Part shown: positions 566-55,444 of the stretch, one piece after another
Numbering within the stretch: the stretch's first letter is position 1
Layout: every line of letters starts with the position of its first letter
Assembly: GCA_002269645.1 (NCBI GenBank)
Contig: NIVC01001253.1
Coordinates: 264,236 to 328,235, forward strand
Length of the DNA: 64,000 nt
Direction of reading: 5' to 3'
From: Macrostomum lignano
Lineage: Eukaryota
Notes under the pieces: model-generated
Told to the model about the DNA's origin: nothing
Databases searched by the model: none
The model's input: the letters and a program-made list of their open reading frames with translations, nothing else
Made by a program: the position numbers and the translations under genes

Positions 566-575
<10 letters not shown>
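370..575. repeat. 28-bp minisatellite x7 overlapping a teneurin splice donor
   Basis: Minus-strand unit GTGTCAGAATG|GTGAGTCATTTAGATGG. Confidence 0.95.
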
Positions 576-29857
<29,282 letters not shown>

Positions 29858-30189
29858 GACGCTCTCATGCAAACGTGGATTCTTCAACGAAACCGAATAT
29901 ATTGGGGTATTCTTTTCATGTCGAAAGTCTGTTGTTTCGTTATTAAATTTTTCCCCAAGCTTCCTTTCCTTGGCTTAGCTATAAACCGGGATTCAGTTTT
30001 AATATACGATTCTGTATGACTGCCGGCTAGCCAATAAAGTGACAGCGATAGCTCCTATTGGCTCAAGCTGTGCATATGCTCTCGGATGCATGCCATTGGT
30101 TCAGACGGGGAGTTCTAAAACCAGTCAACTGGATTTTGGTTTGTGGAAAGCATTGACTCGGTGGGAAATTACACTCATTTTGAAGTGTG

Positions 30190-30730
30190 GGAGCTCACTG
30201 TGGTGTCTCAGTGTCTGGGAGCTCATTGTGGTGTCTGGGTGCTCATTGTGGTGTCTGGGAGCTTATTATGCTGTCTCGAGGAGCTCATACTGGTGTCTCG
30301 AGGAGCTCATTGTGGTGTCTGGGATCTCGAGGAGCTCATTGTGGCTGTCTGGGATCTCGAGGAGCTCATTGTGGCTGTCTGGGATCTCGAGGAGCTCATT
30401 GTGGCTGTCTGGGATCTCGAGGAGCTCATTGTGGTGTCTGGGATCTCGAGGAGCTCATTGTGGTTGTCTGGGATCTCGAGGAGCTCATTGTGGCTGTCTG
30501 GGATCTCGAGGAGCTATTTTGTGGCTGTCTGGGATCTCGAGGAGCTCATTGTGGTGTCTGGGATCTCGAGGAGCTCATTGTGGTGTCTGGGATCTCGAGG
30601 AGCTCATTGTGGCTGTCTGGGATCTCGAGGAGCTCATTGTGGCTGTCTGGGATCTCGAGGAGCTCATTGTGGCTGTCTGGGATCTCGAGGAGCTCATTGT
30701 GGCTGTCTGGGATCTCGAGGAGCTCATTTA
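30190..30730. repeat. 30-bp minisatellite upstream of the teneurin ATG
   Basis: GGGATCTCGAGGAGCTCATTGTGGCTGTCT. Confidence 0.95.
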
Positions 30731-31189
30731 GGTGTAAGATGGATGCTTTTTCTGTGCCCAGGTAACTAAGAGTAATTAGCTGGTTAAAAAGTGCATGAAT
30801 TTGAAGTATACTCGAAATATAAAACAACTTGTCATCAAAGCTTCTTCTTACATGTAAAAGCGTTAGTTTGTGTCATTTAACAAAGCAATCAACTGCAAGT
30901 AACCCTATATTAGCTAGTATATAGCTTTATAGATATATAAATACTATATGGAGCTTTCAAAAGCTCAACGAAGCAATATTTCTATGAGATATTCTTTCCC
31001 AAGCTCTATTACTCGTAGGCACTCTCGCTATAGTTTTAAAAATTGAAGACCAAGACAACAGAAAGCTTAAGTTTATAGCATAGGGTTTATATTTTCAAAA
31101 ACAAAATTGCTAAATAAACGGTTCGATCGACAATTTAACTTAGCAAACGCGCTAATCTACTATTAAAATGGAGTTCGCACAGCAACTGT

Positions 31190-32113
31190 TCACTTTCGGT
31201 AGCTCTTTTTGCTGCCGTAGCCGTACGCCTTGTCGTAGCCGCCGTAATAATCGTTGTAGCCGTAGATATCGGCATAGCCAGGATAGTAATCGCCATAGTA
31301 ATCGCTGTAGTCGTAACCGTAGTCCTTGGCATAGCCGTAATCCTTCTTGCCGTAGCCGTAATCCTTCTTGCCGTAGCCGTAATCCTTCTTGCCGTAGCCG
31401 TAATCCTTCTCGCCGTAGCCGTAATCCTTCTTGCCGTAACCGTAATCCTTCTTGCCGTAGCCGTAATCCTTCTCGCCGTAGCCGTAATCCTTCTTGCCGT
31501 AGCCGTAATCCTTCTCGCCGTAGCCGTAATCCTTCTTGCCGTAGCCGTAATCCTTCTTGCCGTAGCCATAGTCCTTCTTGCCATAGCCATAGTCCTTCTT
31601 GCCATAGCCATAGTCCTTCTTGCCGTAGCCATAGTCATTCTTGTCATAGCCGTAATCCTTCTTGCCGTAGCCGTAATCCTTCTTGCCGTAGCCGTAATCC
31701 TTCTTGCCGTAGCCGTAATCCTTCTTGCCGTAGCCGTAATCCTTCTTGCCGTAGCCGTAATCCTTCTTGCCATAGCCGTAGTCCTTCTTGCCGTAGCCGT
31801 AATCCTTCTTGCCATAGCCGTAATCCTTCTTGCCGTAGCCGTAATCCTTCTCGCCGTAGCCGTAATCCTTCTCGCCGTAGCCCTTCTTGTCATAGCCGTA
31901 GTCCTTCTTGCCGTAGCCGTAGTCCTTCTTGCCGTAGCCGTCGTCCTTCTTGTCGTAGCCGTCGTCCTTCTTGTCGTAGGTCTTGTAGCTACCATAAGTT
32001 GCTACTGGATATTTGTAATCGTCTTTGTAATAGAGCTTCTCGTAGTCCTCGCGACTATTGTAGCCGCCGGCTAGGGCCACTGTGGCCAAGGCGAATAGCA
32101 CAACCAGACGCAT
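31190..32113 (-). CDS. Secreted Tyr/Gly/Lys/Asp-rich heptad-repeat (GYGKKDY)n protein, 307 aa, intronless
   Basis: ATG, signal peptide MRLVVLFALATVALA, about 30 GYGKKDY heptads with synonymous variation (GAT/GAC, TAC/TAT), unique Tyr-rich N- and C-flanks, TATA box upstream. Not a satellite shadow. Confidence 0.88.
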   Translation of the reverse strand: MRLVVLFALATVALAGGYNSREDYEKLYYKDDYKYPVATYGSYKTYDKKDDGYDKKDDGYGKKDYGYGKKDYGYDKKGYGEKDYGYGEKDYGYGKKDYGYGKKDYGYGKKDYGYGKKDYGYGKKDYGYGKKDYGYGKKDYGYGKKDYGYGKKDYGYDKNDYGYGKKDYGYGKKDYGYGKKDYGYGKKDYGYGKKDYGYGEKDYGYGKKDYGYGEKDYGYGKKDYGYGKKDYGYGEKDYGYGKKDYGYGKKDYGYGKKDYGYAKDYGYDYSDYYGDYYPGYADIYGYNDYYGGYDKAYGYGSKKSYRK

Positions 32114-32221
32114 TATTGGTGCAGTAAATCAAGACGCAATATTAATTAATTAGGCGCGAAAGTACAGTTAATTGAATAAATGAATGATAGTGAGATAATT
32201 TGTGCGTCATGCTGGTCAGTA

Positions 32222-32227
32222 TTTATA
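32222..32227 (-). promoter_or_regulatory. TATA box of the Tyr-rich protein gene
   Basis: TATAAA on minus strand about 110 bp upstream of ATG 32113; Inr-like TCACT/TCATT about 25-35 bp downstream; CCAAT boxes near 32250 and 32360. Confidence 0.55.
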
Positions 32228-33056
32228 GACTGCGAAGCTCAATTCCACAGCCAATCGGCAGACGGGGGAGGGTAAGAGATTTCAAGCTGGTGGGGTGATT
32301 CAGCGAGCCAAAATAAGGCCTAAAGGGTAAGAAGGGTTTGAGGCCGCGGAGCTCGCTGATTGGCTGACGTGGCTGCGATCTCCACCCCAATACTAAGAGG
32401 AGGGTGTGGCAGCCAAAGCCCTACGGGGGGTCTTAACCAAATGACAGGCTAGAGTAAGATTTCTGGACTTGGGTGGAGGGTGGGGGGTTTTGCAGTTGTA
32501 TTGACTGGCTGACTGTAAAACTATATACACTAAAAATAGCCTCAATTAGCATTCCGCACCCACCCCTTGTTTTTATCGGCTTTCAATACAGACAACGAAT
32601 TTTGACCTCCACACTTAAAGCTAGTTGAGCATTGAAAGAGGGGGGTAAATGGCTGCTGACTCACTGTTCTCTAACTTATTAAAAAAACAATATTTACGCG
32701 GAAAATGGTCTGATTATAAGGAGTACACAACACACTCAAACATTTCTGCAATAAAGTTAGCCGTGTACTTTTGATTTAACACCTATTGAAACTGCATGGC
32801 AATGAATAATGACGGAATGTTTATCATTGATAACTTAGAACTTATTTGATAGTCTTAGAAAACGGATGAATTCTTTTATCTTCACTTTCCTCTTCGAACC
32901 AATTGACTCAATTAACACACGCTAGAAGTTCTCGCCCAAACTGTAGGTGATGCAAGTTGCGTCACAAAGCTCTAACTTAAACTGGTGAGGAGAGAGTGGA
33001 GATTTATGGCTAGAATGGCTAGAGTGGAGTTAAAGCTACCACTTGTTGATCCGGGG

Positions 33057-33767
33057 TGCTGGCCCAGCAACGGAGTATCTGGGAGGCTGGCCCAGCAACT
33101 GAGGATCTGGGAGGCTGGCCCAGCAACTGAGGATCTGGGAGGCTGGTGGCCCTTCAACTGAGGATCTGGAAGGCTGGTGGCCCAGCAACTGAGGATCTGG
33201 GAGGCTGGTGGCCCAGCAACTGAGGATCTGGGAGGCTGGTGGCCCAGCAACTGAGGATCTGGGAGGCTGGTGGCCCAGCAACTGAGGATCTGGAAGGCTG
33301 GCCCAGCAACTGAGGATCTGGGAGGCTGGCACAGCAACTGAGGATCTGGGAGGCTGGTGGCCCAGTAACTGAGGATCTGGGAGGCTGGCCCAGCAACTGA
33401 GAGAAGGCTGGCCCAGTAACTGGGGATCTGGGAGACTGGCCCAGAAACTGAGGATCTGGGAGGCTGGTGGCCCAGCAACTGAGGATCTGGAAGGCTGGCC
33501 CAGCAACTGAGGATCTGGGAGGCTGGTGGCCCAGCAACTGAGGATCTGGGAGGCTGGCACAGCAACTGAGGATCTGGAAGGCTGGCCCAGCAACTGAGGA
33601 TCTGGGAGGCTGGCACAGCAACTGGGGATCTGGGAGACTGGCACAGCAACTGAGGATCTGGGAGGCTGGTGGCCCAGTAACTGAGGATCTGGGAGGCTGG
33701 CCCAGCAACTGAGAATCTGGAAGGCTGGCCCAGCAACTGGGGATCTGGGAGACTGGCCCAGCAATTT
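33057..33767. repeat. Second array of the 28/31-bp minisatellite family seen at 1025-2775
   Basis: Same unit and orientation, unrelated flanks. Confidence 0.95.
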
Positions 33768-34529
33768 GCCATGTTTAGTGAAACAGTTTCCCGATTCCCA
33801 AGCGATCGAACACAATGGAAGTTCATACAGCGGCTGCGTCAGCTGAACTATATGTATGAAATAAAAAACCGCAAATAAGAGCTATTTTATGACTCAATTT
33901 AAGCTTTAAGTTTGGAAACATTATGTACACGTTAATAAAAGTGAACTCAATTGATCAATTTAATATATTTTAATTGCTGCTAATCAACAGTGAAAATGGT
34001 GTGCATTATTTAGCAGTTAAAAGCAAATTTGCTATAAAACATAATGTATTATTTATGAATAATTGCCAGTTCTGTACATGCACTACACAAGCTTGTGCTC
34101 GGAGTAAGGCATCGATAAGATTAAAGCCTAGGCTAAAGATAACACTATAAACACTACTTGCAGTAGGTATAGAAAATCACAGACAATTTAGTATCTCAAA
34201 TAATATATACTTATATAGTTTATATTACAGCAACAGGCACAATACCTGAGATTGGGTCAATTTTTTTGTATCACTGCAACTTACACAGACTACTTATTTC
34301 ACAAGTAGTACGATAATACAGTGAAACAACTATTTTTCATTAAAAAAACAAGTTGGTAATCGTTAACAGGTAGGTAAACAATAGGGTATAGAATAAGTTT
34401 TAAGTCTTCATTATAATAATAAATGAACCCAACACCTGTTGCTTGTGGAAGCGGTTAAAGTACTCATATGAGTAGTGTTTGTTTAGTCTGGAACTATTAA
34501 CTAAATAACGCATCTTAAGGATTTTTGCC

Positions 34530-35530
34530 ATTGGGGTGTCCTGGACTCTCATCAGATCTCTGAGAACGGGGACGTCCTTGGACTCTCATGAGATCTCTGA
34601 GAACGGGGTGCCCTGGACTATCATGAGATCTCTGAGAACTGGGTGTGCTGGACTATCATGAGATCTCTGAGAACGGGGTGCCCTGGACTATCATGAGATC
34701 TCTGAGAACTGGGTGTGCTGGACTATCATGAGATCTCTGAGAACGGGGTGCCCTGGACTATCATGAGATCTCTGAGAACTGGGTGTGCTGGACTATCATG
34801 AGATCTCTGAGAACGGGGTGCCCTGGACTATCATGAGATCTCTGAGAACTGGGTGTGCTGGACTATCATGAGATCTCTGAGAACGGGGTGCCCTGGACTA
34901 TCATGAGATCTTTGAGAACGGGGTGCCCTGGACTATCATGAGATCTCTGAGAACGGGGTGTGCTGGACTAACATGAGATCTCTGAGAACGGGATGCCCTG
35001 GACTCTCATGAGATCTCTGAACGGGATGCCCTGGACTCTCATGAGATCTCTGAACGGGGTGTCTGGACTCTCATGAGATCTTTGAGAACGGGGTGCCCTG
35101 GACTATCATGAGATCTTTGAGAACGGGGTGTCTGGACTCTCATGAGATCTCTGAGAACGGGGTGCCCTGGACTATCATGAGATCTCTGAGAACTGGGTGT
35201 GCTGGACTATCATGAGATCTCTGAGAACGGGATGCCCTGGACTCTCATGAGATCTCTGAACGGGGTGTCTGGACTCTCATGAGATCTTTGAGAACGGGGT
35301 GCCCTGGACTATCATGAGATCTTTGAGAACGGGGTGTCTGGACTCTCATGAGATCTCTGGGAACGGGGTGTCTGGACTCTCATGAGATCTCTGAGAACGG
35401 GGTGTCTGGACTCTCATGAGATCTCTGAGAACGGGGTGTCTGGACTCTCATGAGATCTCTGAGAACGGGGTGTCCTGGACATGAAATCTTTGAGAACGGG
35501 GTGCCCTATACTCTCATGAGATCTCTGAGA
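34530..35530. repeat. 35-bp minisatellite, partly an alternating A/B 70-bp dimer
   Basis: CTGGACT(A/C)TCATGAGATCTCTGAGAAC(TGGGTGTG/GGGGTGCC). Confidence 0.95.
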
Positions 35531-36086
35531 ATGATCCCTAGACTCTCGTGGTATATTTGAGAACAGATTTTACGGGATTTTTTTCCGGATTGTTTAGGAC
35601 AGATAAACAAACAAACTCAAAGGCTGTCAAAATTTAATAGCAGCGCAAAAAAAAGCCAAAAAGCAAACAATACCCCTGACTAGTAGTACAGTGTGGTGCA
35701 AAAAAAGCATAACTCGTACGAAATTCTGTGATGAGAAAAAGCACACGATTGATGAAAGCGCACAAAGTACTACTACATGTATTACACTGCTTAAAGTAGT
35801 CAGTCGGGAGTAATTGGAAACCAATTAAACAAACCGCGTTAAAAATGTTAAATCTGGCCAAATTTACGCAATATCAATACTTTGTTTAATAAATCATAAA
35901 TTAAAACGATTGCTTTTATTAAGACTTTTTAGAAAGAGAATCCTTTCTACCCTACCCGGCTTTCGGGTCCTTTGAAACTTCACAATAGCAAACCGGCTCG
36001 TTTAAGGTTTGTGTCTGTTCTCAGCTCGTTTGTCTGTACTCACATCTCCTCTCTTATCTAATCTTTTCAATTTTATCTTATCTCTC

Positions 36087-36427
36087 GGGGGGCCGTAGCC
36101 CAGCGGTAGCCAGCGGCCCAGGCTCGATTCCAAGTGCAGTCACATTAATTTGGGGCTAAATTGGAATCTCGGCTTGGCTCTGCTCGTGCAATTAACGGCC
36201 TTGAGAGCCAACCCCCCAAGGCGCAGTGAAGTGTACATGCCTAACGATAAAATAAAGTTAGCGCCGCTGTACACTCCTGTGTGAGTGTGTGCCTGCGTAC
36301 GTATCCGCGCGCTTGTGTGCCTGCTCAGGGGAGTTGGCGGAATGGGCAGTAATGCCTCTCGCCGGTTGTGTGCCTATGTCGCTTAAAGTGCGCCAGGGTG
36401 CGCACAACCCCCTGCCTCTAATAAAAA
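36087..36427 (+). mobile_element. tRNA-headed SINE, fullest copy
   Basis: A-box TAGCCCAGCGG, B-box GGCTCGATTCC, 3' end CCCCTGCCTCTAATAAAAAAA; homologous copies elsewhere in the window. Confidence 0.7.
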
Positions 36428-36723
36428 AATCTCATCTCTCCTTTTTTATAATCTATCGACTCTTATCTCATCTCTAATCATCTCTCTTTTCTGCCCTTTT
36501 ATAATCTCTATGCTTATCTCCTCTCTTCTTCCCTATCCTCTAATCTCTCCGCTTATCTCCTCTTTCTCTTATAATCTCCACTTCTATCTTCCCCATTTTC
36601 TCATCTATTATCTGGCCGTCCGAATGGTAAAAAAGCCTTTGCCGAGCCCTGTACTACACACACAAACACAAATAAATATACAAGGCTACTGGCAATTAAA
36701 TCAATTAACAGAAAAAAGAGATT

Positions 36724-38219
36724 TCAGTATCTAAACAGAGCCACAGTGAGCAGGCCCAAGACATAGGCTGCTACTAGTTTGACATGGTGCGACACGGACA
36801 AGTTGGACAGGCTGTTCACAGTCCATAGCCAGTACGACTGCGACTGCTGCTGCTGCTGGTGTTCTTGCAGCTTTGCGACAGATTCTTCTGAACTGATGCC
36901 TTGATACAGCGGCATGGCCAGAAGGCTCACACACACAACGGCTAGGCTCAGGGTAAACCCCAACGGTAGCGGCGCTTGTGTCGCTCCCGGCATCAAGGTC
37001 GTCGACGTGGACAAAGTCGGATTATTGTCGAACCGTCGCTGCGTTGGCAAAGACGACCCGCCGGTTGTCGAACTCAGCGGCGACGGCACGCCGACAGGTT
37101 CGACAAATTGACCAGCGCCGCTTTGAGCAGCCGAGCTCAATGGCACGTCGAGTCGGAGCACGCAGTCGACATCTCGATAGCCAATTACTGAGCTGCCAGA
37201 CTGGCTGTGTAGTTGAATGCGAAGCCGGTGTTTCGCTACCGGCGAGTCTTCGGTCAGGCTGCGAAAGTCCTGAGCTCGAATCAGCCTATGAGCGGGGTGG
37301 TTGGGGTTGCTTGGCTTGATTTCTAAGAAAGAGCTACTTTTGGACAGAGTGGTTTCTAAGAAATGAACTATCTTAGAAAGAGTGGTTTCTAAGAAATGAA
37401 CTATCTTACACAGTGGTTTCTAAGAAATGAACTATTTTAGACAGAGTGGTTTCTAAGAAATGAACTATCTTAGAAAGAGTGGTTTCTAAGGAATTAACTA
37501 TCTTAGAAAGAGTGGTTTCTAAGGAATTAACTATCTTAGAAAGAGTGGTTTCTAAGAAATGAACTATTTTAGACAGTGGTTTCTAAGAAATGAACTATCT
37601 TAGAGAGTGCTTTCTAAGAAATGAACTATTTTAGACAGAATGCTTTCTAAGAAATAAGCTAATGTTCAGACAGGGTGGTTTTTAAGAAATGTGATGAATT
37701 TTAGACACAGTGATTTCTAAGAAATGGACATTCTTAGAGAGGGGTTTCTAAGAAACGAACAATCTTAGAGAGAGTGGTTTCAAAGAAATAAGTTACTTTA
37801 GACAGAGTGGTTTCTAAGAAATCAGTTATTTAATACAGAGTGCTTTCTAAGAAATGAACTATTTTAGACAGAGTGGTTTCTAAGAAATAAGCTAATGTTC
37901 AGACAGAGTGGTTTCTAAGAAATGTGATGAATTTTAGACACAGTGGTTTCTAAGAATTGGGCTAATGTTTAGACAATCTACATAACAATGGTACTTACAC
38001 ATCAACACAACACTGTTTCTGTATCACACCTTTGCTCTCTCTCACTATGTAGTGATTTGGATGAGTTGATAAAATGCTAAAGGCAATTGAAGTGTTATAG
38101 ATATTGTATATAGTAAGGATTTGCTTGTGTGTATTAGCCAATTTTGCTATAAACTCCAGTTTTTGTGTTGAAACAAACACTGGGAAATCTTTAGGCTTGT
38201 TACTTCCACTGCCTTTCAT
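36724..38219 (-). CDS. MOSPD1: Motile sperm domain-containing protein 1-like, 260 aa
   Basis: Exons 38219-37999 and 37285-36724 (phase 2). FPVFVSTQKLEF...HKQILTIYN...KQCCVDV|LIR and C-terminal HHVKLVAAYVLGLLTVALFR match MOSPD1 (LPVFVFPTELIF, THKQVLTLYNP, KPQCCVDIVIR, QKLVAAYILGLITMAILR, recalled). Confidence 0.92.
37315..37975. repeat. About 33-36-bp minisatellite filling the MOSPD1 intron
   Basis: AGTGGTTTCTAAGAAATGAACTAT(C/T)TTAGA core. Confidence 0.92.
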
Positions 38220-44365: not shown

Positions 44366-47300
44366 ATGATTAACTTTCACAATAAGACAACAAAGCAGTG
44401 AGTAACACATAATTGTTTTTTATTCAATGTTTTTGTTTTGATAAAACACTTTTTTAATTTTTTACAATATTTTTAACAAAGCTTTATCTTTTATTCATCT
44501 AGGGCACTTCTGCATCAGACTAAACAGTCCACAAAGCAGATGGAAGAGGAAACAAAAAAGATGGAAGTTCGCCTCCAAGAGCTTAAACTGGCAATGGAGA
44601 ATGAGCGACAGCAGAGGGCGTGAGTTGATCAAAATATTCAATTTAAAATCGTGCGCTTGTACGCAAATTCTATCTGTACTCAATGCGCTCAACCCCAAAA
44701 CCACCACCACCATTGTCACCAAACTGCAGAGTCAGTGGCAACCCCGGCTTCTGGTCGCGTGGTCAGGCTGGCGCGCTAACTAACTACAAGTCAGTCAGCG
44801 CTGGCGCTAAAAAACCGGCGCCGCCCAGCAGTGGTCCACCGGTGAGAACCGATGTGACAGACAGTGATAGCCAATGTGACTGACAGTGATAGCCAATGTG
44901 ACAGGCAGTGATAGCCAATGTGACAGACAGTGATAGCCAATGTGACAGACAGTGATAGCCAATGTGACAGGCAGCGATAGCCACTGTGGCAGACAGTGAT
45001 AGCCAATGTGACAGACAGTGATAGCCAAAGTGACAGGCAGTGATGGCCAATGTTACAGACAGTGATAGCCAATGTGACAGACAGTGATAGCCAATGTGAC
45101 AGACAGTGATAGCCAATGTGACAGACAGTGATAGCCAATGTGACAGACAGTGATAGCCAATGTGACAGACAGTGATAGCCAATGTGACAGACAGTGATAG
45201 AAGTAACCGAAAGACAAGTTGATCTATGCTCTATAGGAAAAATACGAATATTAAGGACTACAAAGATTCAACCCACCTCCCTACTCAAATCCTACAACAG
45301 CCCGCCGGCTCTACAAAAGCCGCTGCATCTTCAGTGCGGAAAGTGAAGCTGATCAAAGACGAGCCGATCAACCTGCCGGACAGGACCGCAGCTGCTGCCG
45401 CGATCCCGGGCACCCTGGCACACCTGGCCAACAGAGGTGCGGCTGTCGCTAACGAGGACTCGAACGTTAGAAAGCCTACTGGAGGCCGCACTCGAGGCGG
45501 TGGAGGTGGCGGAGGTGTCAGCGCAGCAGGCGGCGGAGCGCCTCGTTGCGGCCAGTGCGAGGACCGAGCAGCAGCGGTGCTGTGCCCGGAGTGCGCTGAG
45601 GAGTACTGCGCCAGGTGTTTCGCCGCCTTCCACCTGAAAGGAGCGTTGAGAAAGCATCGCTCTTTGCCTCTATCGGCTGTGAGTTGCTGGGGCCAACACG
45701 GTAGCTGATTAACTGTCAATTGGGCAGGGGGACCCAGTAAAGGTCAAGTTGGGTCAATGCTCCCTTGGAAAACAAGTTAAAATACTGCAATCAAACAACG
45801 TATTTTTGTGGCTATGGTACAAGGGGCACCACGATGCAATCAAACACACTTTACAGTCGATAATGCTTAAGCATACCTAGGATTTTTTATTTAATAAAAC
45901 GAAATTACATAAATTCTGTTTGCATGGCCTCAGGTGAACACCCCGCGTCAGTCGCTCGGCCAGAATCTTTCCACTGGAGCGCCAGCAGCAGCTGCTTCAT
46001 CGAGCAGCGGAGGCGGGGGCGGCGGTGATGGGGTCTTCGAAGACACCAGCCGTCAGACCCGGCGCAACATGGTTCGCCAGCTGCTCCACGGAGACGAAGG
46101 CGAGTCGAGTTCGTCCACCTCAGAGGCGATGGCATCCAATGGCGGCGGAGCCCTGCTCACTGGCGAGGTCGACGAGCGGCAGAACGCCGAGGAATTCCGA
46201 CGCGCCCTGGCCGAGTGGCGATCCGGTGGAGGCGGCGAAGCGCAGAAGCCAACGGCAGAGCCGGCAGCTGCTAGGAAGAAGCCAGCGGGCCAGCAGCAGC
46301 GGCAGCAGCCGAGGCAGCAGACGTCCAGCCACGGGACTGCGACGGAAGACGACAACGGCGGCCGATTGTCGTCTAGACTGGAAATCAAGTTCACCTCGTC
46401 GTTGAGCTACGCCGAGCAGCTGCTGTTACAGAAGCATCGTCGCGCTGATGTTGGCAAGATGCCCAGCTACCAAGGCGAATCTAGCGGCGCTAACGACACG
46501 TTTGAAGAAATCCGCAGCATGCAACGCCAGCAGAAGGAGTTGGCGGAGACGCCGCGGAGCTCGGGAAACGACTTGGAGCGATTGCCTGCCAGGGTGAGTG
46601 CAAAGTTTTGATCCATTTTTATTATTCAGTTTACTAACTTGGTACGCTTAAAATGTCACAAAGTGAGAGCAAGCGCTTAGTCTCGATTCTAGCTTTTGAC
46701 ACAATTTAGATTGACAACTTTTGCTTCACCCCCCCCCCCCACAAAAATTGCGCTCATCCAAAAACTAAATGAATTAGTGATAACCAGCTCAATGAATGAC
46801 GTGAGCTCAACTTTTGCCATATCTTGGACAGGCTGTCCAACGGCCTAGAAGACTGGAGTGTGGGTTCCCACCAAGAGACAGGGGTGACAAAAAGAGACAG
46901 GGGCGACCAACAAGAGACAGGGGCGCCCAACAAGATACAGGGGTGATCGATTAACAAGAGACAGGGGCGACCAACAAGATACAGGGGCGATCGATTAACA
47001 AGAGACAGGGGCGCCCAACAAGAGACAGGGGCGCCCAACAAGAGACATGGGCGACCAACAAGAGACAGGGGCGACCAACAAGAGACAGGGGGAATTTTTT
47101 CATTTTTAAATCAAGAATTTAACACCAAAGACTCCAAAAGAAATATCATTATCAACCCGTGAGCACTTATTAAAGAATTATATAATTTTTTCTCATTTAA
47201 AACCGGGGCGCCCACCAAGAGACAGTGGCGACCAACAAGAGACCCCTCCAAACAAAAATTCCTTCCTATGCAACCGTTTCGAGTACTTATATAGAAGATG

Positions 47301-49184
47301 CGTCGCCTTTTCGCAGACGAATCGAACCAAAATCGACGATATGTTTCCGGCGCAATTGGACAACGCTGACGAAGCTGCGCCACCGCCTGACGACGAAGAG
47401 GAAACTCCTCGGGCGCCACCAACCCCCTCTGAATCTGGTTCTCGTCCAGGTACGGCCCGCAGTCAGCGGCAGCAGCAGCGACGGCGGCAGCAGTTCGGTC
47501 TCGAGTGGCAACGGCCGAAGACTCCGGCAGGTTCAGGGAGGTCATCGGCGACGCCGCGCAAGCAGCAGCAGCACAAGCTGACGGCAGCGGCCACGGGTGG
47601 CCTATCTGCACTTCTGGCGCGCCAGTCGATGATGTCAACGATGGAATCCTCATCGAGTCAGCAGGAGCGCAGCTTCTTGATGATGGGCGTTGAGGACAAA
47701 TCGGCGAACGCGACCTCTTCGTCCAATGCAACTCGTCGTCAGGGCAACGTCGCCCCCTGGAGCTCCGGCGACAGTCGGCCCTCCTCGGCGGCCTCCTCGA
47801 GACCATCTAGCGCCCTTAGCAACCGTTTCTACGCCCTGAGCGGCCGTCAATCCTGGCGTCCCGATGCAAGCCTGCGAAGCGCCGGTCTCGACGCGGAACA
47901 GTTGCTAAGGACTCGAGCTGAAGCCGACCGGTTGCTAATGTCAGCCTCCAGCGGACAGAGACCGGACAGCGGCCGGATGCAGCTGGAGGATGTCGAGATC
48001 GAGACGGAGGCGCGCGTGCTTGCAGCGATGCCGCTCAGCCGGCCGGTCAGCGCTCGGACAGAGCGTCAGCGTCTGCGAGCTTCGGCTGCGGCGGCTTCCC
48101 GAGTGTCCAACGGCGATCGAGTCGCCTCCATGGAGTTGGACGTGACCGCCGACTACCTTCAAGATGATGTCGAGCATCTGAGTCGACTGGCGATTGAGTT
48201 GGCCACTCGAGAGGAGCCGGAAGGTGATCTATTCTGCACATACAAGTGTGCTGATACTGTACGCAGGCACGCACTCATACACATGCTCACACAGGGTGTA
48301 CAGAGGCACTGATTTTTTGATCGTCATGCATGTACACTCTCTGTGCCATGGGGGTTGGCCAGTCTTGAAATGATTGTGGCCGCGCACAGATTCAAATCAG
48401 GGGTGTCGCGGCTGGCGCGAGACTGCATTGAGAGCTCAAATTACGACAAGGCATCTCAACATACAACTTGTTACTTTGTAAACAATCAATCTTCAGAATC
48501 TAACGCCGACGAGATGAATCATCCGGCTGTCGCGGGTCTGGTTGGCAGAGAGCTCACCCAGGAAGACAAGGAAAGGTGAGAGTTGGGTCTGGTTGGCAGA
48601 GAACTCACCCAGGAAGACAAGGAAAGGTGAGAGTTGGGCCTGGTTGGCAGAGAGCTCACCCAGGAAGACAAGGAAAGGTGAGAGTTGGGTCTGGTTGGCA
48701 CAGAGCTCACCCAGGAAGACAAGGAAAGGTGAGAGTTGGGCCTGGTTGGCACAGAGCTCACCCAGGAAGACAAGGAAAGGTGAGAGTTGGGCCTGGTTGG
48801 CACAGAGCTCACCCAGGAAGACAAGGAAAGGTGAGAGTTGGGCCTGGTTGGTACAGAGCTCACCCAGGAAGACAAGGAAAGGTGAGAGTTGGGTCTGGTT
48901 GGCAGAGAGCTCACCTAGGAAGACAAGGAAAGGTGAGTCGGGTCTGGTTGGCAGAGAGCTCACCCAGGAAGACAAGGAAAGGTGGGAGCCGAGCGTTTCT
49001 TTTAGGCCTCCAGGTGTCACTTTAGGTTCTGTTTCTACATGTATTCAACATGCTTGTCTAAGAATTAACTACGAGTTGGTTAAAAACTAATTGCAGACAA
49101 CTGCAGGAATGGGACGACAGTGACATGGACCGCATGGACACTGAACGATACGATGATCGAGATGAAGTTCGGCAGCTGCATTAA
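44366..49184 (+). CDS. ZBBX: Zinc finger B-box domain-containing protein, 790 aa
   Basis: Exons 44366-44397, 44503-44619, 44730-44841, 45301-45678, 45934-46593, 47317-48223, 48497-48575, 49097-49184 splice in frame (2373 nt). Coiled coil MEEETKKMEVRLQELK, FWSRGQAG, RKVKLIKDE and B-box CGQCEDRAAAVLCPECAEEYCARCFAAFHLKGALRKH resemble ZBBX. The first exon is least certain. Confidence 0.85.
44853..45200. repeat. 22-bp minisatellite in ZBBX intron 3
   Basis: GTGACAGACAGTGATAGCCAAT. Confidence 0.95.
46855..47092. repeat. About 21-bp minisatellite in ZBBX intron 5
   Basis: ACCAACAAGAGACAGGGGCG; related units at about 47205-47250. Confidence 0.88.
48235..48430 (-). mobile_element. Diverged partial copy of the same SINE in a ZBBX intron
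   Basis: Reverse complement shares gtgtacatgc and acaccctgtgtgag...gtgcctgcgtac..tatc with the 36087 copy. Confidence 0.55.
48535..48985. repeat. 51-bp minisatellite x9 overlapping the ZBBX exon 7 donor
   Basis: GGTCTGGTTGGCAGAGAGCTCACCCAGGAAGACAAGGAAAG|GTGAGAGTTG. Confidence 0.96.
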
Positions 49185-50705
49185 AGAAGTGGCTGTTATT
49201 GTTAACAAAGATCATTGCGTTAGTGAAGTGGATTAGCGAAATTCTAAATGAAATATTTACGTTAAAATACACATGATGAAGGCAATTTTTACATACTTTC
49301 TGGTTCAAATTTAAACAGAATTTAAAAAGATTGAAGGATATTAGTTTTGAAAAACTACAATACCGCAATGAGTGGTACGTATGCTTTTTCAGCTGAATGT
49401 TAACGTTGCAAATTATGAAATAGCTAATGCATGTTGAAATGAAATTTGGCCTTCAATAAAAAGTCTGTAACTTAGGCTCCATGCGTCCTTGCACTTTAAC
49501 AGTGTTCTCTGCAGGTGAACGCTGAATGTTATTTGATGTTTTTAGCCGAACGGTCTTCTTAACCAACGTTTGTTCAAATATTGTTAAAGCAAAGTCCTGG
49601 GGCGATGACTCAGTAAAGTGCATGTAATTTATGTACATCTTTTTTTCGTCCCTGGCCTGCTCTGAATGAATTTAGTACAATGGGAGGGCTGCGTCTTTAG
49701 TCGTAAGAACTGTAAGCTTTCCTTTGTCTTAACTAAGATCCCTTGTTTCCTGCTTTACGTCAAGTGCTGTTCTTTACTCTTTCAAGTTAATTACCATTTT
49801 TATTCTTTGTGATGATAACAAGGGCCGGCTTTTTCTATAGTCTCGTATGCTCTTGTGAGTGTCAACACTGATTCACCTGCGACTGCTTTATTTTACAATT
49901 GATAATAAATTTTACTAATAAATTTGATTTTCCTCTGTTAAAAAAATTGGTAATGTCAAGACGTACGTTCGGAGACTGTTTCAAAACGAGTTCAGTTAAT
50001 TTCAATTCGCTCGCGCAAGCACAAGTAGTAAGGTAGTTATGCCATGCAGGGACTTCTGCGGTGTAAATTTACGATGCATTGAATAGAAAAGAAGGGATTG
50101 AAAACTCGGCTTTAGTGATTAAGAAATATTAGAGATGGCTGATTGAAAGGAAAATGAACATATGTTATATTTATTAGCTTTTCTTACTAAAAAGTAAGTT
50201 AAATATCCAAGGATATGTCACTAAAATCTAACTACGGACGCATTAACTAACGAGTGAAACAAAAGAACGGGAGGACAGGAGTTTGGTTCGTTACAAATAA
50301 GCAAAGCTCATTGTCGGTTCTTTTACTGAACCAATCCTTGCTGGCATTGAACTTCTCAATCGCCTCTTGACAGAAAACTGGAAACTTAATAGGAATGGAA
50401 TCCGTCTTCTTGAACAGTTCAAGCTCTCGATTATCATCAGCAGTTGCGCGCGATTCAAGCAAACTCGGTAGGTGGATCAGCCGGACGTTTTCGCCTCTTC
50501 TTTTTGACCATTTTGGCTCCCGGAAGCCAATGCAGTCTGCAGATCTCCAAACTTTTTACTTTGCCATTGGGCAATGCGGTTAAATAGCGCTGACGCACCG
50601 CTTCGTCCGTGGGTTGAGCAGCCACACTACATTGCAGAAGTCCCTGGTTATGCTCATCACTCAACTGATGAGTAGAGAGAGAGTGATCTTCTTCTTGAAG
50701 CAAGA

Positions 50706-51445
50706 AGATTTTCGGCCCGCACTGAACTCATTCTGGAACCGCGGCTTTTGTAAGCAGTGCCGTCATGACGCTGGAGCTGTGCATCCGAATCTGCGCCTAC
50801 GGTCGGTTCCGTTACTTCGGTGCTCAGGCTGGAGTATACTGCTGCTGCGGCTCCGCTTACGGCTCGCACGGTGCCGCTCCTGAAATCAGTGCAGATCTGT
50901 CTGCACTGGAAACTCGTCACAGGTGTGCGGTGGAGGCTACAAAAATTCAATCTACGAAATCAGCTACCAACAAAGTACGAAGTTTACCCACTGCAAACTT
51001 TCTCTAAGTACATTTAAAAAGATGTAAAAGAAGTGACACCCGACTTTCAGAAGTCAATTTTTTTTATTCTTAGATATGCTCGTGATTTTTTTCATTTATT
51101 TCTTTCAGCTGAACTGAATTATTGTGGCAATGCTTATGGATATGCAATCGTTGTGTCGAGCCTAAACCATTCTTGTAAAAACGCACCCGTAGGTGATCGT
51201 GTAATGAAAAAGCTGGCTGTAGCATCAATGCCGAGCATCTCAGCCTCCAGCAGCTCCACAGCTCCATCACCCACTGCGACGCTACAGCCTATAACGTCAT
51301 TGAGTGCGTTTCGGTCTGTCAACGCAGTCAGGACTGCCTGGGCTGCGCCTTCACGCCATCGAGCCGGCTGTGTCGCCTGCTAAAGTTTGCCGCTGTGCCC
51401 GCTGAGGTGGCCAGCGAGGCTGAGTGGGTTTGGATGAAGCTGTGA
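50706..51445 (+). pseudogene. WSC-PAN paralogue A, 5'-truncated pseudogene
   Basis: No signal peptide; CGA>TGA near 50721; 1-nt deletion at cctgaaatcagtgc; 8-nt duplication cagctcca in exon 2. Intron 50975-51192 is nearly identical to that of paralogue C. Confidence 0.85.
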
Positions 51446-51640
51446 GGCTGAGTAGGTCTGAATGAAGCTGTGAGGCTGAGTGGGTCTGGATGAAGCTGTG
51501 AGGCTGAGTGGGTGTGAATGAAGCTCTGAGGCTGAGTGGGTCCGGATGAAGTTGTGAGGCTGAGTGGCTCTGGATGAAGCTGTGAGGCTGAGTGGGTCCG
51601 GATGAAGCAGGGAGGCTAAGCGTGTCTGGATGAAGCTGAG
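51416..51640. repeat. 28-bp array at the 3' end of WSC paralogue A
   Basis: GAGGCTGAGTGGGTCTGGATGAAGCTGT. Confidence 0.93.
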
Positions 51641-52199
51641 AATGATTGCAAGCAAAGATATTTCATAAAGATGCTCAAAGCCTGCTCAAAAGCAACTCAT
51701 AATAGCTCCTATCTGCTATAACTCAAAGTGAAAAATGTTTATTAGTAAATTCGAAAGTACGTTGCTGGAATACGAACTGAAGCTGCTATCACTATTAAAT
51801 ATTAATTTCGTTAAACTGTGGGACCCAAGAGACTTAAAAAAGTTGGAGAACCTTTTCTTCTTCATTTAACCATTTGGTTTCCTAACCATCTGATGAGGGG
51901 TTGAATTAACCAACTGAAACTACATGTAAATATTGCAACTAGCACATGTCAGCAGGTGCTAAAGCCCCTGGTGCCGCCGCTCCTGGTGCTGGCGCGCCTG
52001 GTTCTAAAGCCCCTGGTGCTAAAGCCCCTGGTTTATTAATTATACATTTAAGCACTAAAAAATTCAAACAGAGGCCAGAAGAAATTGCAAATATTTAGCA
52101 ACGATCACTCAAAAAAACAAATTCAAACAAAGGCCAGAAGAAATTGGCCCAATTGGCCCAGACTAATAAAACTTGTACAAGTCCATGTGCTTGTATGGG

Positions 52200-52380
52200 A
52201 GGGGCCGTAGCCCAATGGTCAAGCGCGGCACTCTTACACCCTGTGTGAGTGTGTGCCAGTGCGTATGACGCCGTAGGAATGGGCAGTCAGTAATGCTTTT
52301 CGCCTGTTGCGTGACAATGTCGCATAAAGTTCGCAAGGGTGCACACAGCCCCCCTGCCTCTAATAAATCAAATAAATAAC
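52200..52380 (+). mobile_element. Internally deleted copy of the same SINE
   Basis: GGGGCCGTAGCCCAATGGTC head joined to acaccctgtgtgagtgtgtgcc...ggaatgggcagt...cccctgcctctaataaa tail. Confidence 0.65.
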
Positions 52381-52395
52381 GTGCCACGACCTCAC

Positions 52396-52768
52396 TTGGT
52401 CGGGTAGCTGATTTCGTAGACTGAATTCTTAAATACTCCACCGCACATCTGTGCAAGGTTTCCGGCGCAGGCCGAGCTGCAGTCGGTCTCAGGAGCAGAG
52501 CCATTTGAGCCGTAGGCGAAGCCGTATCTGCAGTACTCTGAATTGAGCACCGAAGTAGCGGAACCGGCTCCAGAGTCGTTGCAGCGCTTCCTACGAAATT
52601 TGGTATGTCAGGCTTAACTGACTGCGGCCCGAAAGCTGTGACTCCAAAGCAGACCTTTCAAGTGTCTATCAGTCTCAAGTCCCTTTCAAGGAATAGAAAC
52701 CAAGGTAGCGAAATCCCAGAGGCTGCAGCGGAGCAGCTGCCAGACAGCCACAATAAAGGACTATCCAT
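52396..52768 (-). pseudogene. WSC-PAN paralogue B, decayed exon 1 only
   Basis: QPLGFRY, GVTAFGP, RFRYFG, CSSACAGN..QMCGG.FKNSVYEISY recognisable across frameshifts; LCSQICAYG segment deleted; no exon 2 seen. Confidence 0.8.
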
Positions 52769-53413
52769 GTAGATGGACAGGAAAATATACTTCTTGGAAA
52801 ATTTTACCATTATATTATACATTTCACTATACAGTTTTTCCTTCACTTCCACGAGTGAAGGAAAAAAGGAAGGAAGTGAGATGCTTTGGGAGCTCCATCT
52901 TTACCCATCGATCTACCTGCTGTAGAAGCTTACATGCTCTTACAGAAACTCTCGAGCCATAAGTCCTCTTGTTCAATTCCTTTAAACTGAATAAATTTGG
53001 TTTTGAGCTTGTCCTGCGTCCATCAGTTGCTGTTTCTCAAGTCGCAGCATCTGGGGGGCCGCTCAGACCATGCGTGAATAGGTGCGCGTGTGAAATACCA
53101 CCTGGTTCATTAATGCATCGATGTAGCTAGTTGCAAGAGCAAGGCAGCTTCAATCATCTTCATGACAGCAATCAGCTTTCTCCCCATCGACTTTCCCCAT
53201 CATTCAAACTACCAGCTGATTATGCCATGTCAATTCGTTTATCTCGACCAGCTGCTGTGTGAGAACTGCATCATTTGTCGCCTACTCTATGGCTGCTCCA
53301 ACTAATGAGGCTTTTTGTCGCTTTTCCTGTCATTTTTTATTCGATCCATGGTAACTCAAATTTATGTTACTGAATGTGTCATGTACAATGTCATCCGTGC
53401 GAAATGTGTCATG

Positions 53414-53495
53414 TGCGTATCGGATGGTGCCAGTGTCATGCTCGGTCCGCGTGACGGCGTCGTAGCTCGGCTGAAGTGAATCATTCCTCACATCG
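53414..53495 (+). mobile_element. Decayed hAT transposase fragment
   Basis: CVSDGASVMLGPRDGVVARLK*IIPHIVE* matches the hAT catalytic xDGASVMxG...GV.A.LK motif; contains stops. Confidence 0.7.
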
Positions 53496-53989
53496 TCGAA
53501 TAAATACCGGGATATAGTGTCAGACAATTTGCCTGCGTATTGTAATAAGCAGCTGAGGGTGCAGTACACTCATTTTAGCAGGTGCCAAAATATAAATATC
53601 GATGAGAATGAAGAGTAGCTAAAAGTGCTGCTCTCGTTCGACTCTTCAAATGACGAAATTAAGCGTGGGTTAACAGTGCCCACAACAAAATGATCAATTG
53701 TTGTTGCTCAGTACCCAAATTCGGATAGCTACTTTTTCAATAGCGAAAAACAGAGTTTCAGAGTTCCATCAGTTTATATTTCGTACTTTTGACACCTACG
53801 AAACCTTTTACTATTTAAAGCAGTCTTTAAAAATATTAATCTGCAGTTTATAGTTAGAATTCTTTACTAAAAACTTACTTTAAACTCAATACAAGGCACT
53901 GACAACAAAATCGCTTTAAATTGAGAACCTCTATGAATAAATAAAGTTTAGAATATGTTGCTTAGAAAACCCAGTGCACCCATGAACAC

Positions 53990-54382
53990 AGTTTCATCCA
54001 GCTGGAACCACTCAGCCTCACAGCTTCATCGAAACCCACTCAGGCTCACAGCTTCATCCAGACCCACTCAGCCTCACAGCTTCATCGAAACCCACTCAGC
54101 CTCACAGCTTCATCGAAACCCACTCAGCCTCACGGCCTCATCGAAACCCACTCAGCCTCACAGCTTCATCGAAACCCACTCAGCCTCACGGCTTCATCGA
54201 AACCCACTCAGCCTCACAGCTTCATCGAAACCCACTCAGCCTCACAGCTTCATCCACACCCACTCAGCCTCACAGCTTCATCCACACCCACTCAGCCTCA
54301 CAGCTTCATTCACACCCACTCAGCCTCACAGCTTCATTCACACCCACTCAGCCTCACAGCTTCATCCACACCCACTCAGCCT
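53990..54382. repeat. 28-bp array at the 3' end of WSC paralogue C
   Basis: Same unit on the minus strand, about 13 copies. Confidence 0.93.
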
Positions 54383-55240
54383 CGCTGGCCACCTCAGCAG
54401 GCACAGCGGCAAACTTTAGCAGGCGACACAGCCGGCTCGATGGCGTGAAGGCGCAGCCCAGGCAGTCATGACTGCTTTGGCAGACTGAAACGCACTCAAT
54501 AACGCTATAGGCTGTAGTGTCGAAGTGGGTGATGGAGCTGTTGGAGGCTGAGATGCTCGGCATTGACGCTACAGCCAGCTTCTTCATAGCAGGACTACCT
54601 GCGAAAGGGGTGTTTACAAGATTTTTTTAAGCTTGGCACTACACGATTGCATTTCGATAGGCATTGCCACAATAATTCAGTTCAGCTGCAAAAATTACAT
54701 GAACAAAATCACAAGCATAACTAAGAATAAAGACATTTGACTTCTGAAAGTCGGGTGCCACTTCTTTTACATCTTTTTAAATGTACTTAGAGAAAGTTTG
54801 CAGTGGGTAAACTTCGTACTTGGTTGGTAGCTGATTTCGTAGATTGAATTTCTGTATGCTCCACCGCACACCTGTGACGAGTTTCCAGTGCAGACAGATC
54901 TGCACTGACTCTCAGGAGCGGCACCGTGCGAGCCGTAAGCGGAACCGCAGCAGCAGAATTCTCCAGCCTGAACACCGAAGTAGCGGAACCGACCGTAGGC
55001 GCAGATTTGGCTGCACAGCTCCAGCGTCATGACGGTACTGTTTACGAATTCCGGGGTTCCAGAATGAGTTCGGTGCGGGCCGACAGCTGTGACTCCTTGC
55101 AGGCCGGTTAAGTCCCTGTTACCACTAACGCCGTCCTTATAGCAACCGATGTAGCGAAATCTCAGAGGCTGTGTATGAACAGAAGCTTCAATGGTCGACC
55201 ACAGCAGCAGAAATTCGACAATGAAACTCCTTGGATTCAT
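54354..55240 (-). CDS. Secreted WSC + PAN/apple-like domain protein, 221 aa (paralogue C, intact)
   Basis: Exons 55240-54820 and 54598-54354 (phase 1). Signal peptide MNPRSFIVEFLLLWSTIEA; WSC YIGCY...MTLELCSQIC...YFGVQAGEFCCCG...C...C.GNSSQVCGG; exon 2 SVIECVSVCQSSHDCLGCAFTPSSRLCRLL is a PAN/apple-type Cys pattern. Confidence 0.85.
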
Positions 55241-55444
55241 GGCTTCCGAATCGGTAAAGAATGTTAGAAACAGACAAACTGTGCGGCAGTTCAATTTATT
55301 GTTTTTATGTTTTTCTGTTTCTCTCCCCCTCTGTCTTCCTAAGCCAAACTTTCGTCATTGGCTCCAAGAATTCAGACGATGCTCGCTGGTTGGAAGCAGT
55401 TTTTTCAGATGTCACTTGCTTACAGATTACTTCAGGTTCTTGTC

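What the first reader, a model, noticed from the sequence alone, without database searches (positions are those of the whole stretch)
31190..32113. Secreted (GYGKKDY)n protein: candidate DOPA-crosslinked eggshell or adhesive precursor
Seen: signal peptide, no Cys, about 30 heptads with two Tyr, two Gly, two Lys and one Asp, an acidic Tyr-rich tail and a basic end; single exon with a TATA promoter. Established: trematode eggshell precursors (Schistosoma p48 with GYDKY repeats, Fasciola vitelline proteins) and mussel foot proteins are Tyr/Gly/Lys-rich and are converted to DOPA then quinone-tanned to Lys. Inference: an analogous, possibly undescribed structural biomaterial protein; I do not recognise this heptad.
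Basis: partly seen in the sequence, partly recalled or inferred. Interest (0 to 1): 0.78.

Follow-up and report, generated by a model that had tools for sequence, protein, structure and literature searches.

The report
Secreted tyrosine-rich heptad-repeat flatworm protein
A real-looking, previously undescribed single-exon gene of the flatworm Macrostomum lignano encodes a secreted, disordered protein made of about 31 GYGKKDY repeats. Its chemistry matches the tyrosine/lysine-rich precursors that flatworms tan into eggshell, but neither its tissue nor its function has been shown.

Summary
Window 31190..32113 (minus strand) is an uninterrupted 307-codon ORF. It has a signal-peptide-like start, no Cys, and a composition of 27% Tyr, 22% Gly, 21% Lys and 15% Asp. 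There are 22 exact GYGKKDY heptads, 5 GYGEKDY and a few degenerate ones. An acidic Tyr-rich tail and a basic end follow, and TATAAA lies 114 nt upstream.

The window is the end of contig NIVC01001253.1 of Macrostomum lignano, a free-living flatworm. That assembly's gene set, which is RNA-seq-derived, calls exactly this ORF. It calls neither the longer antisense ORF nor a chance minisatellite ORF.

The window holds about 35 minisatellites that make chance ORFs, so the ORF alone proves little. The signal peptide, the in-frame Tyr-rich flanks, the mostly third-position repeat variation, the promoter and the gene call together favour a real gene (about 0.85).

No homologue exists in 5.8 or 1.8 billion proteins, no Pfam family matches (including the trematode eggshell TES domain), and the papers searched do not contain the motif. 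Composition matches schistosome eggshell precursor p48 (26% Tyr, 15% Gly).

My best reading is a secreted, tyrosinase-crosslinkable structural precursor, with the egg envelope the leading candidate. Tissue, DOPA and function are untested.

The parts
31190..32113 (-). Complete single-exon CDS of 307 codons plus a TGA stop at 31190..31192. The mature protein is about 292 aa, 34.3 kDa, pI about 9.0, GRAVY -2.0.
   Evidence: The exact product is called as a gene on NCBI GCA_002269645.1 contig NIVC01001253.1.
32069..32113 (-). Signal-peptide-like N-terminus MRLVVLFALATVALA, with predicted cleavage after A-L-A before GGYNS.
   Evidence: hydrophobicity rank 3 of 63; only helix, residues 5-14. This is a heuristic; no SignalP was available.
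31982..32068 (-). Non-array N-terminal segment GGYNSREDYEKLYYKDDYKYPVATYGSYK (8 Tyr in 29 residues, net charge 0).
31325..31979 (-). A 21-bp tandem array encoding the heptads. There are 22 GYGKKDY, 5 GYGEKDY and degenerate units (TYDKKDD, GYDKKDD, GYDKK, GYDKNDY). Net charge is +15.
   Evidence: 31.5 copies, 92% match
31193..31330 (-). C-terminal tail: an acidic Tyr-rich stretch (net -5) followed by the basic end DKAYGYGSKKSYRK (+4). At the DNA level it is still recognisably a degenerate, in-frame copy of the repeat.
   Evidence: (array self-matches reach down to 31213 at 68-84% identity)
32222..32227 (-). TATAAA box, 114 nt upstream of the ATG.
32251..32255 (-). Inverted CCAAT box (ATTGG in GCCGATTGGCTG), about 25 nt upstream of the TATA box.
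   Evidence: A similar CCAAT/ATTGG pair precedes the neighbouring teneurin gene.
32359..32363 (-). CCAAT box in CAGCCAATCAGCG, 250 nt upstream of the ATG.
31088..31093 (-). AATATA, the nearest possible variant poly(A) signal, 97 nt after the stop. No AATAAA or ATTAAA occurs within 590 nt.
   Evidence: This is a weak assignment.

Best explanation
This is a genuine, lineage-restricted, single-exon gene of the flatworm Macrostomum lignano with its own TATA/CCAAT promoter.

Shown from the sequence: the product enters the secretory pathway through a cleavable signal peptide. The mature chain of about 34 kDa is an intrinsically disordered, mildly basic polyampholyte built of about 31 GYGKKDY heptads. 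Each heptad carries two Tyr, two Lys and one Asp, separated by Gly.

Inferred: the protein is packed into secretory granules as a dense phase held by Lys-Tyr cation-pi, Tyr-Tyr and Lys-Asp contacts. After release, a phenol oxidase or tyrosinase converts Tyr to DOPA and then to quinone, which is attacked by the neighbouring Lys amines. Peroxidase-made dityrosine is an alternative cross-link. Either route gives an insoluble tanned sheet.

Most likely material (inferred): the egg envelope, meaning the eggshell granules that accumulate in M. lignano oocytes, or the secretion of the shell glands around the female antrum.
For: Real gene:
- The ORF, signal peptide and composition are as described.
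- The flanks outside the array are Tyr-rich and in frame (24 of 75 residues), and the tail is a degenerate in-frame repeat.
- Repeat variation is mostly synonymous in this frame only (16 of 23 cells, against 1 of 23 for the antisense ORF).
- TATAAA, ATTGG and CCAAT lie upstream.
- The exact product is called as a gene in GCA_002269645.1. The antisense 319-aa ORF and a 431-aa minisatellite ORF are not.
- That assembly's GenBank annotation was built only from RNA-seq transcripts plus TransDecoder (PMC5730564).

Material precursor:
- Composition is 27% Y, 22% G and 21% K with no Cys and no fold (pLDDT 38.9).
- S. mansoni eggshell precursor p48 has 26% Y and 15% G (PMC3499410).
- Flatworm eggshells are tanned through Tyr, DOPA, quinone and Lys/His cross-links.
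- The animal's temporary adhesive is already accounted for by two unrelated giant proteins, Mlig-ap1 and Mlig-ap2.
Against: - No expression, peptide or DOPA evidence could be obtained here.
- No homologue of any kind was found, not even a paralogue or another Macrostomum sequence.
- There is no TES domain.
- The exact protein is absent from the 15-billion-sequence protein collection, so its GenBank protein status, and hence its transcript support, is inferred rather than seen.
- The codon-position test is only suggestive when counted by variant types.
- There is no canonical poly(A) signal.
- I did not verify a Macrostomum tyrosinase.
- The only shell/cement-gland transcript with a published probe, RNA815_13, is an unrelated 16-kb VWA/collagen-like gene.
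Confidence: 0.4

Rival explanations
1. The chemistry is the same, but the tissue is different. The protein is a secreted Tyr/Lys-rich structural or adhesive component made by another gland. Candidates are cement for gluing eggs to the substrate, rhabdite or mucus glands, pharyngeal glands, or prostate/seminal fluid. It would not be a component of the eggshell itself.
For: The sequence features (signal peptide, disorder, Tyr/Lys/Gly repeats) do not specify a tissue. Tubeworm cement proteins Pc-1 and Pc-2 carry about 10% and 7% DOPA. From memory, Pc-1 is built of VGGYGYGGKK repeats, close to YGYGKK here; I could not verify this. M. lignano has cement glands and many gland types. Reproduction-related secreted genes evolve fast in this genus (title of PMC7336406, listed), which would fit an orphan gene.
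Against: Temporary adhesion is explained by Mlig-ap1 and Mlig-ap2, found by RNAi, antibodies and footprint mass spectrometry. No positive evidence points to any particular gland.
Confidence: 0.25
2. It is a multi-copy peptide precursor. Prohormone convertases would cut at the KK pairs, carboxypeptidase would trim them, and the exposed C-terminal Gly would be converted to an amide. The result would be about 20-25 copies of a tetrapeptide such as DYGY-amide, acting as a neuropeptide or defence peptide.
For: The protein has a signal peptide, no Cys and 22 G-K-K sites at a strict 7-residue spacing. The architecture resembles directly abutting precursors such as the APGWGKR-repeat protein P0151, which the search happened to retrieve.
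Against: The sites are KK rather than the usual KR or RR. Five units have EK, and four have D in place of the amide-donor G. The non-repeat N-terminus and the 46-residue tail keep the Tyr/Gly/Asp composition without processing sites, which indicates selection on bulk composition and not on one peptide. A Tyr content of 27% is typical of structural precursors. No such peptide string occurs in the literature searched.
Confidence: 0.07
3. It is not a functional protein. The 21-bp minisatellite happens to be open in several frames, and spurious or low-level transcription led to an ORF call.
For: The window carries about 35 minisatellites, many with long meaningless ORFs. Three ORFs cross this array, and the antisense one is even longer. 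There are no homologues, and the protein is absent from the protein collection. The codon-position signal is modest by types. There is no canonical poly(A) signal.
Against: A textbook signal peptide sits immediately at the first ATG, outside the array. The degenerate flanks are in frame and Tyr-rich. TATA and CCAAT boxes are correctly placed. All partial-unit indels are multiples of three. The gene set calls this ORF but not the other minisatellite ORFs tested. The variation is strongly non-synonymous in the antisense ORF frame.
Confidence: 0.13

Closest known systems
Schistosoma mansoni eggshell precursor p48 (and p14/p19), vitellocyte proteins tanned by tyrosinase
   Same: Both come from the same phylum and are secreted precursors. 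Tyr and Gly content is nearly identical (p48 has 26% Y and 15% G, against 27.4% Y and 22.5% G here). From memory only, p48 uses short Tyr/Asp/Lys/Gly repeats (GYDKY), the same four residues.
   Different: No detectable sequence homology was found: no flatworm protein appears among the named hits and no comparably Tyr-rich protein among 160 retrieved. The period is a heptad, not a pentad. M. lignano has no vitellaria, so synthesis would have to occur in oocytes or shell glands. The p48 motif could not be verified in the library.
Fasciola/trematode vitelline protein B family (TES domain, PF08034 / IPR012615)
   Same: It is a flatworm eggshell precursor whose Tyr are converted to DOPA and cross-linked.
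   Different: The TES domain is absent (0 Pfam hits at E<=10). TES proteins have only about 6-7% Tyr and are not simple tandem repeats.
DOPA adhesive and cement proteins of mussels (mfp-1) and sabellariid tubeworms (Pc-1/Sa-1)
   Same: These are secreted, basic, Cys-poor tandem short repeats rich in Tyr, Gly and Lys. Tyr is converted to DOPA by co-secreted tyrosinases (for Pc-1 and Pc-2 DOPA content). The Pc-1 decapeptide VGGYGYGGKK (recalled, not verified) shares the YGYG..KK core.
   Different: They come from different phyla and show no homology. The Asp in every repeat here gives a polyampholyte rather than a polycation. No evidence for DOPA or an adhesive role exists here. M. lignano's known adhesive proteins are unrelated giants.
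Convergent KKDYGY-type repeat proteins of unrelated eukaryotes (P0003 from a JGI metagenome; P0008; Thraustotheca clavata THRCLA_21863 = P0001; Amoeboaphelidium proteins P0005 and P0006)
   Same: They have a signal peptide followed by D/K/Y/G short repeats such as DKKDYGYQ, GYGRRDY and DDGYGKK. Identity reaches up to 81% over the repeat only.
   Different: Matches are confined to the repeats. The other domains and flanks are unrelated, Tyr content is much lower (at most 20%), none has a Pfam family or a known function, and their taxonomy is scattered. This is compositional convergence, not homology.

Membership tests
Trematode eggshell synthesis (TES) / vitelline protein B family | Presence of the TES domain (PF08034 / IPR012615) | tested here: not met
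   hmmscan against Pfam-A gave 0 families even at E<=10
Schistosome p48/p14-type eggshell precursors | N-terminal signal peptide and extreme Tyr+Gly content | tested here: met
   Signal-peptide heuristic. Y 27.4% and G 22.5%, against p48 at 26% and 15%.
Schistosome p48/p14-type eggshell precursors | Detectable sequence relationship to p48, p14 or p19 | tested here: inconclusive
   No flatworm protein appears among the named hits, a flank-only query gave 0 hits, and the 1.84-billion-protein scan gave only period-7 look-alikes. No p48 sequence was available for a direct pairwise test, and low-complexity repeats defeat homology inference.
Schistosome p48/p14-type eggshell precursors | Expression in shell-granule-forming cells and incorporation into the eggshell | not testable with these tools
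   This needs in situ hybridisation, positional RNA-seq or eggshell proteomics.
DOPA-containing quinone-tanned structural or adhesive proteins (functional class) | Post-translational Tyr-to-DOPA conversion and cross-linking by a co-expressed tyrosinase or phenol oxidase | not testable with these tools
   Only the substrate-like sequence (two Tyr and two Lys per heptad) is shown. A Macrostomum tyrosinase was not verified here.
Multi-copy amidated peptide prohormones | Signal peptide plus repeated peptide copies, each ending in Gly and flanked by dibasic cleavage sites | tested here: inconclusive
   There are 22 G-K-K sites. However, the sites are KK and not KR/RR, 5 units have EK, 4 have D in place of G, and the Tyr-rich flanks lack sites.
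Non-coding minisatellite with a chance ORF | No coding signature beyond an open frame: no start context, no frame-specific variation, not in the gene set | tested here: not met
   Signal peptide outside the array, frame-specific variation, Tyr-rich in-frame flanks, promoter boxes, and a gene call for this ORF only.

The most novel reading that the evidence does not exclude
This is the major eggshell-granule precursor of an archoophoran flatworm, made by the oocyte itself. That would make it the first molecular component of an eggshell from a flatworm without vitellaria. It would show that the Tyr/Lys quinone-tanning recipe of trematode and planarian eggshells predates the invention of yolk glands. 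It would also show that the recipe is carried by rapidly turning-over low-complexity repeat genes, here a previously unseen GYGKKDY heptad, and not by a conserved protein family.
Probability: 0.3. Interest if true: 0.6.

Novelty: new member of a known kind. Interest (0 to 1): 0.42.

Why it matters
Nothing is known at the molecular level about eggshell or cement material in archoophoran flatworms. Yet M. lignano is the flatworm model in which eggs are injected through that shell and in which in situ hybridisation, RNAi and transgenesis are routine.

A single small gene encoding a 27%-Tyr, 21%-Lys secreted repeat protein is an immediately testable candidate. If confirmed, it would link the oocyte-made shell granules of basal flatworms to the vitellocyte shell globules of parasites, whose egg production drives schistosomiasis pathology and transmission.

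It would also add a compact, Cys-free, self-neutralising Tyr/Lys/Asp heptad to the set of sequences used for bio-inspired coacervate and DOPA materials. If it proves to be an ordinary gland secretion or an untranslated ORF, the interest is small.

Tried and rejected
- Pfam scan of the protein gave nothing. Pfam scans of the five best look-alikes also gave nothing.
- Full-length homology search returned only repeat-only matches in oomycete, aphelid, chytrid and metagenome proteins.
- A query made of the non-repeat N- and C-terminal parts found 6 word-sharing candidates and no hit at E<=10.
- An exhaustive phmmer search of 1.84 billion representatives gave 965 hits. Those inspected are all other 7-residue-period repeats (VMYGYVR, SGSGSAD, PKPEYGP and similar). 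None of the 160 retrieved proteins exceeds 20% Tyr.
- The PDB sequence search returned only the RNA polymerase II CTD heptads at E=0.55, which is a periodicity artefact.
- AlphaFold2 on the single sequence gave no fold. A repeat solenoid is therefore not supported.
- The exact sequence is not in the clustered protein collection.
- Literature string searches for the heptad returned no papers. GYDKY and VGGYGYGGKK gave only irrelevant hits.
- I tested whether the published egg-shell/cement-gland transcript RNA815_13 is this gene. It is not; it is a 16-kb VWA/collagen-like transcript.
- Lengerer et al. 2018 (tail-organ in situ screen) is not held in the library.
- I looked for paralogues or other Tyr-rich ORFs and for duplicated flanks in the window and found none.
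- An Rfam scan of the window gave nothing.

Full report
**What is there.** Window 31190..32113 carries, on the minus strand, an uninterrupted ATG-to-TGA frame of 307 codons. The protein starts MRLVVLFALATVALA|GGYNS. That start has one basic residue, a 13-residue hydrophobic core and an A-L-A cleavage motif. After 29 non-repetitive but already Tyr-rich residues come about 31 seven-residue units: 22 exact GYGKKDY, 5 GYGEKDY, and degenerate forms such as TYDKKDD, GYDKKDD and GYDKNDY. An acidic Tyr-rich tail follows (AKDYGYDYSDYYGDYYPGYADIYGYNDYYGGY, net -5), then a basic end (DKAYGYGSKKSYRK, net +4). Overall composition is Tyr 27.4%, Gly 22.5%, Lys 21.2%, Asp 15.0%, with no Cys. The mature chain is 292 aa, 34.3 kDa, pI about 9.0 and GRAVY -2.0. 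At the DNA level, Tandem Repeats Finder (TRF) reports 31.5 copies of a 21-bp unit at 31325..31979, with 92% matches.

**Where it comes from.** The exact 307-aa product is on record as a called gene on NCBI assembly GCA_002269645.1, contig NIVC01001253.1 (328,235 bp), at about 295,425-296,348. [quoted passage not shown] The window is the last 64 kb of that contig. The paper reports that 15% of this genome is simple and tandem repeats. This fits the roughly 35 minisatellite arrays in the window.

**Is it a gene or an open minisatellite?** This is the real chance question. Many arrays in the window give long meaningless ORFs. Three ORFs overlap this very array, and the antisense one (31168..32127, 319 aa, CRSRNPS repeats) is even longer. 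Six observations favour the minus-strand 307-aa frame.
- The signal-peptide-like segment lies outside the array. It ranks third in hydrophobicity among all 63 ATG-ORFs of at least 80 aa, and the two above it are hydrophobic repeat artefacts. It is the only structured element AlphaFold2 sees (helix 5-14; mean pLDDT 38.9).
- The 75 ORF residues outside the array contain 24 Tyr, against about 4% expected (p about 1e-15). The tail is still recognisable at the DNA level as a diverged copy of the repeat (68-84% identity), yet it keeps the frame.
- Among 26 in-register units there are 7 kinds of substitution, 5 of them at third codon positions. In this frame 16 of 23 variant cells are synonymous, against 1 of 23 in the antisense ORF frame. 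Counted by kinds rather than cells the signal is only suggestive (p about 0.05-0.1), because copies are not independent.
- The two partial units (15 and 18 bp) are multiples of three.
- TATAAA lies 114 nt upstream of the ATG, with an ATTGG box about 25 nt further up and a CAGCCAATCAGCG box at -250. A similar CCAAT/ATTGG pair precedes the neighbouring teneurin gene.
- The gene index holds this ORF, but neither the antisense ORF nor a 431-aa minisatellite ORF from the same window. The GenBank annotation of this assembly was derived solely from RNA-seq transcript models with TransDecoder.

Four points count against. The exact protein is not in the 15-billion-sequence protein collection. Transcript support is therefore inferred and not seen. 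There is no AATAAA or ATTAAA within 590 nt of the stop. No paralogue was found. I put the probability of a real protein-coding gene at about 0.85.

**Relatives.** There are none.
- Pfam gives no family at E<=10, so the trematode eggshell synthesis (TES) domain of vitelline protein B is absent.
- The word-indexed search of 5.8 billion clusters returns only repeat-confined matches in an oomycete, aphelids, a chytrid and metagenomes.
- A query made only of the non-repeat ends returns nothing.
- The exhaustive phmmer scan of 1.84 billion representatives returns 965 hits. Those inspected are unrelated period-7 repeats, and none of the 160 proteins retrieved exceeds 20% Tyr.
- The PDB gives only the RNA polymerase II CTD heptads at E=0.55.
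- The heptad strings occur in none of the 8.3 million papers searched.

The gene is thus an orphan, undescribed, low-complexity gene.

**What it most likely does.** Shown: the sequence encodes a secretory, disordered polyampholyte in which every seven residues offer two Tyr, two Lys and one Asp separated by Gly.

Established knowledge:
- Flatworm eggshells are built from Tyr-rich precursors. Their Tyr is hydroxylated to DOPA and oxidised by tyrosinase or phenol oxidase to quinones, which cross-link with Lys or His.
- The schistosome precursor p48 has 26% Tyr and 15% Gly, almost the values found here.
- M. lignano is archoophoran. [quoted passage not shown]

Inference: the protein is stored as a condensed phase in granules, through Lys-Tyr cation-pi, Tyr-Tyr and Lys-Asp contacts. 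After exocytosis it is tanned into an insoluble layer, with the egg envelope as the leading candidate. I give this 0.40.

**Rival readings.**
- The same chemistry in another gland (egg cement, rhabdites or mucus, prostate) gets 0.25. The tail-plate temporary adhesive is already explained by the unrelated giants Mlig-ap1 and Mlig-ap2.
- A different reading is suggested by the 22 G-K-K sites: a multi-copy prohormone yielding DYGY-amide. The KK rather than KR sites, the five EK units, the four D-for-G units, and the site-free Tyr-rich flanks argue against it (0.07).
- A non-functional ORF keeps 0.13.

**Comparison with the known.** The protein works like, or at least looks built like, schistosome p48-type eggshell precursors and the DOPA cement proteins of mussels and sabellariid worms. 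Pc-1 and Pc-2 of the latter carry about 10% and 7% DOPA.
- Membership in the TES/vitelline-B family was tested and failed.
- Membership in a p48 family cannot be decided, because no homology is detectable and no p48 sequence was available. Both remain leads.
- The published shell/cement-gland marker RNA815_13 is a different gene.

**Verdict.** Tissue, modification and function remain wholly untested. It is best filed as a new, orphan member of the known kind 'secreted Tyr/Gly/Lys tandem-repeat precursors of tanned biomaterials'. Interest is moderate. It is directly testable in a tractable model, and it would be the first eggshell-type precursor from a flatworm without yolk glands. It is not mechanistically surprising.

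Noticed in passing
window 1..38000 and 44800..56700: The minisatellite load is extraordinary: about 35 arrays with periods of 5-51 bp, each 0.2-1.7 kb long. Many produce long spurious ORFs in several frames. The same 28/31-bp unit (GCTGGCCCAGCAACTGAGGATCTGGGAG) forms two arrays 30 kb apart, at 1026..2766 and 33058..33764.
   Followed up: partly
window 31168..32127 (+): A 319-aa antisense ORF (Arg/Ser/Cys/Pro-rich CRSRNPS heptads) completely overlaps the gene and is longer than it. It is not in the gene set, and its repeat variation is almost entirely non-synonymous (1 of 23 cells). It is a by-product of the sense codon usage.
   Followed up: yes
window about 29974 downward, minus strand (L001 12140..20924+): A teneurin gene (2,688-aa product; GBD, EGF, NHL and YD-shell domains) starts 1.2 kb downstream of the Tyr-rich gene on the same strand. 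Its ATG is near 29855, and its own CCAAT/ATTGG pair lies at about 30020-30060. Its introns must contain many of the minisatellites.
   Followed up: partly
window 54767..55294 (-) and 50765..51007 (+): There are two WSC-domain ORFs (PF01822; E=3.9e-15 and 1.1e-5). The first has a signal-peptide-like start. A prostate-gland-specific M. lignano transcript (RNA815_80.4) is reported to carry two WSC domains. No link to that transcript was tested.
   Followed up: partly
window 45226..48312 (+): A run of GC-rich (up to 57%) ORFs, rich in Ala, Gly, Gln and Ser. The first has an ANCHR-like B-box zinc-binding domain (PF22586, E=5.8e-8). They are probably exons of one gene.
   Followed up: partly
window 59906..60508 (+): A 200-aa ORF whose start (GVDGNELADREAKRA...) looked like the RNase H end of a retroelement. 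Pfam gave no hit at E<=0.01, so this is unconfirmed.
   Followed up: partly
proteins P0001, P0003, P0005/P0006, P0008, P0047: Secreted proteins with very similar short modules (DKKDYGYQ, GYGRRDY, DDGYGKK, GKKDFGY) occur in an oomycete, aphelids and unidentified metagenome or transcriptome organisms. None has a Pfam family. The D/K/Y/G short-repeat design seems to have arisen repeatedly.
   Followed up: partly
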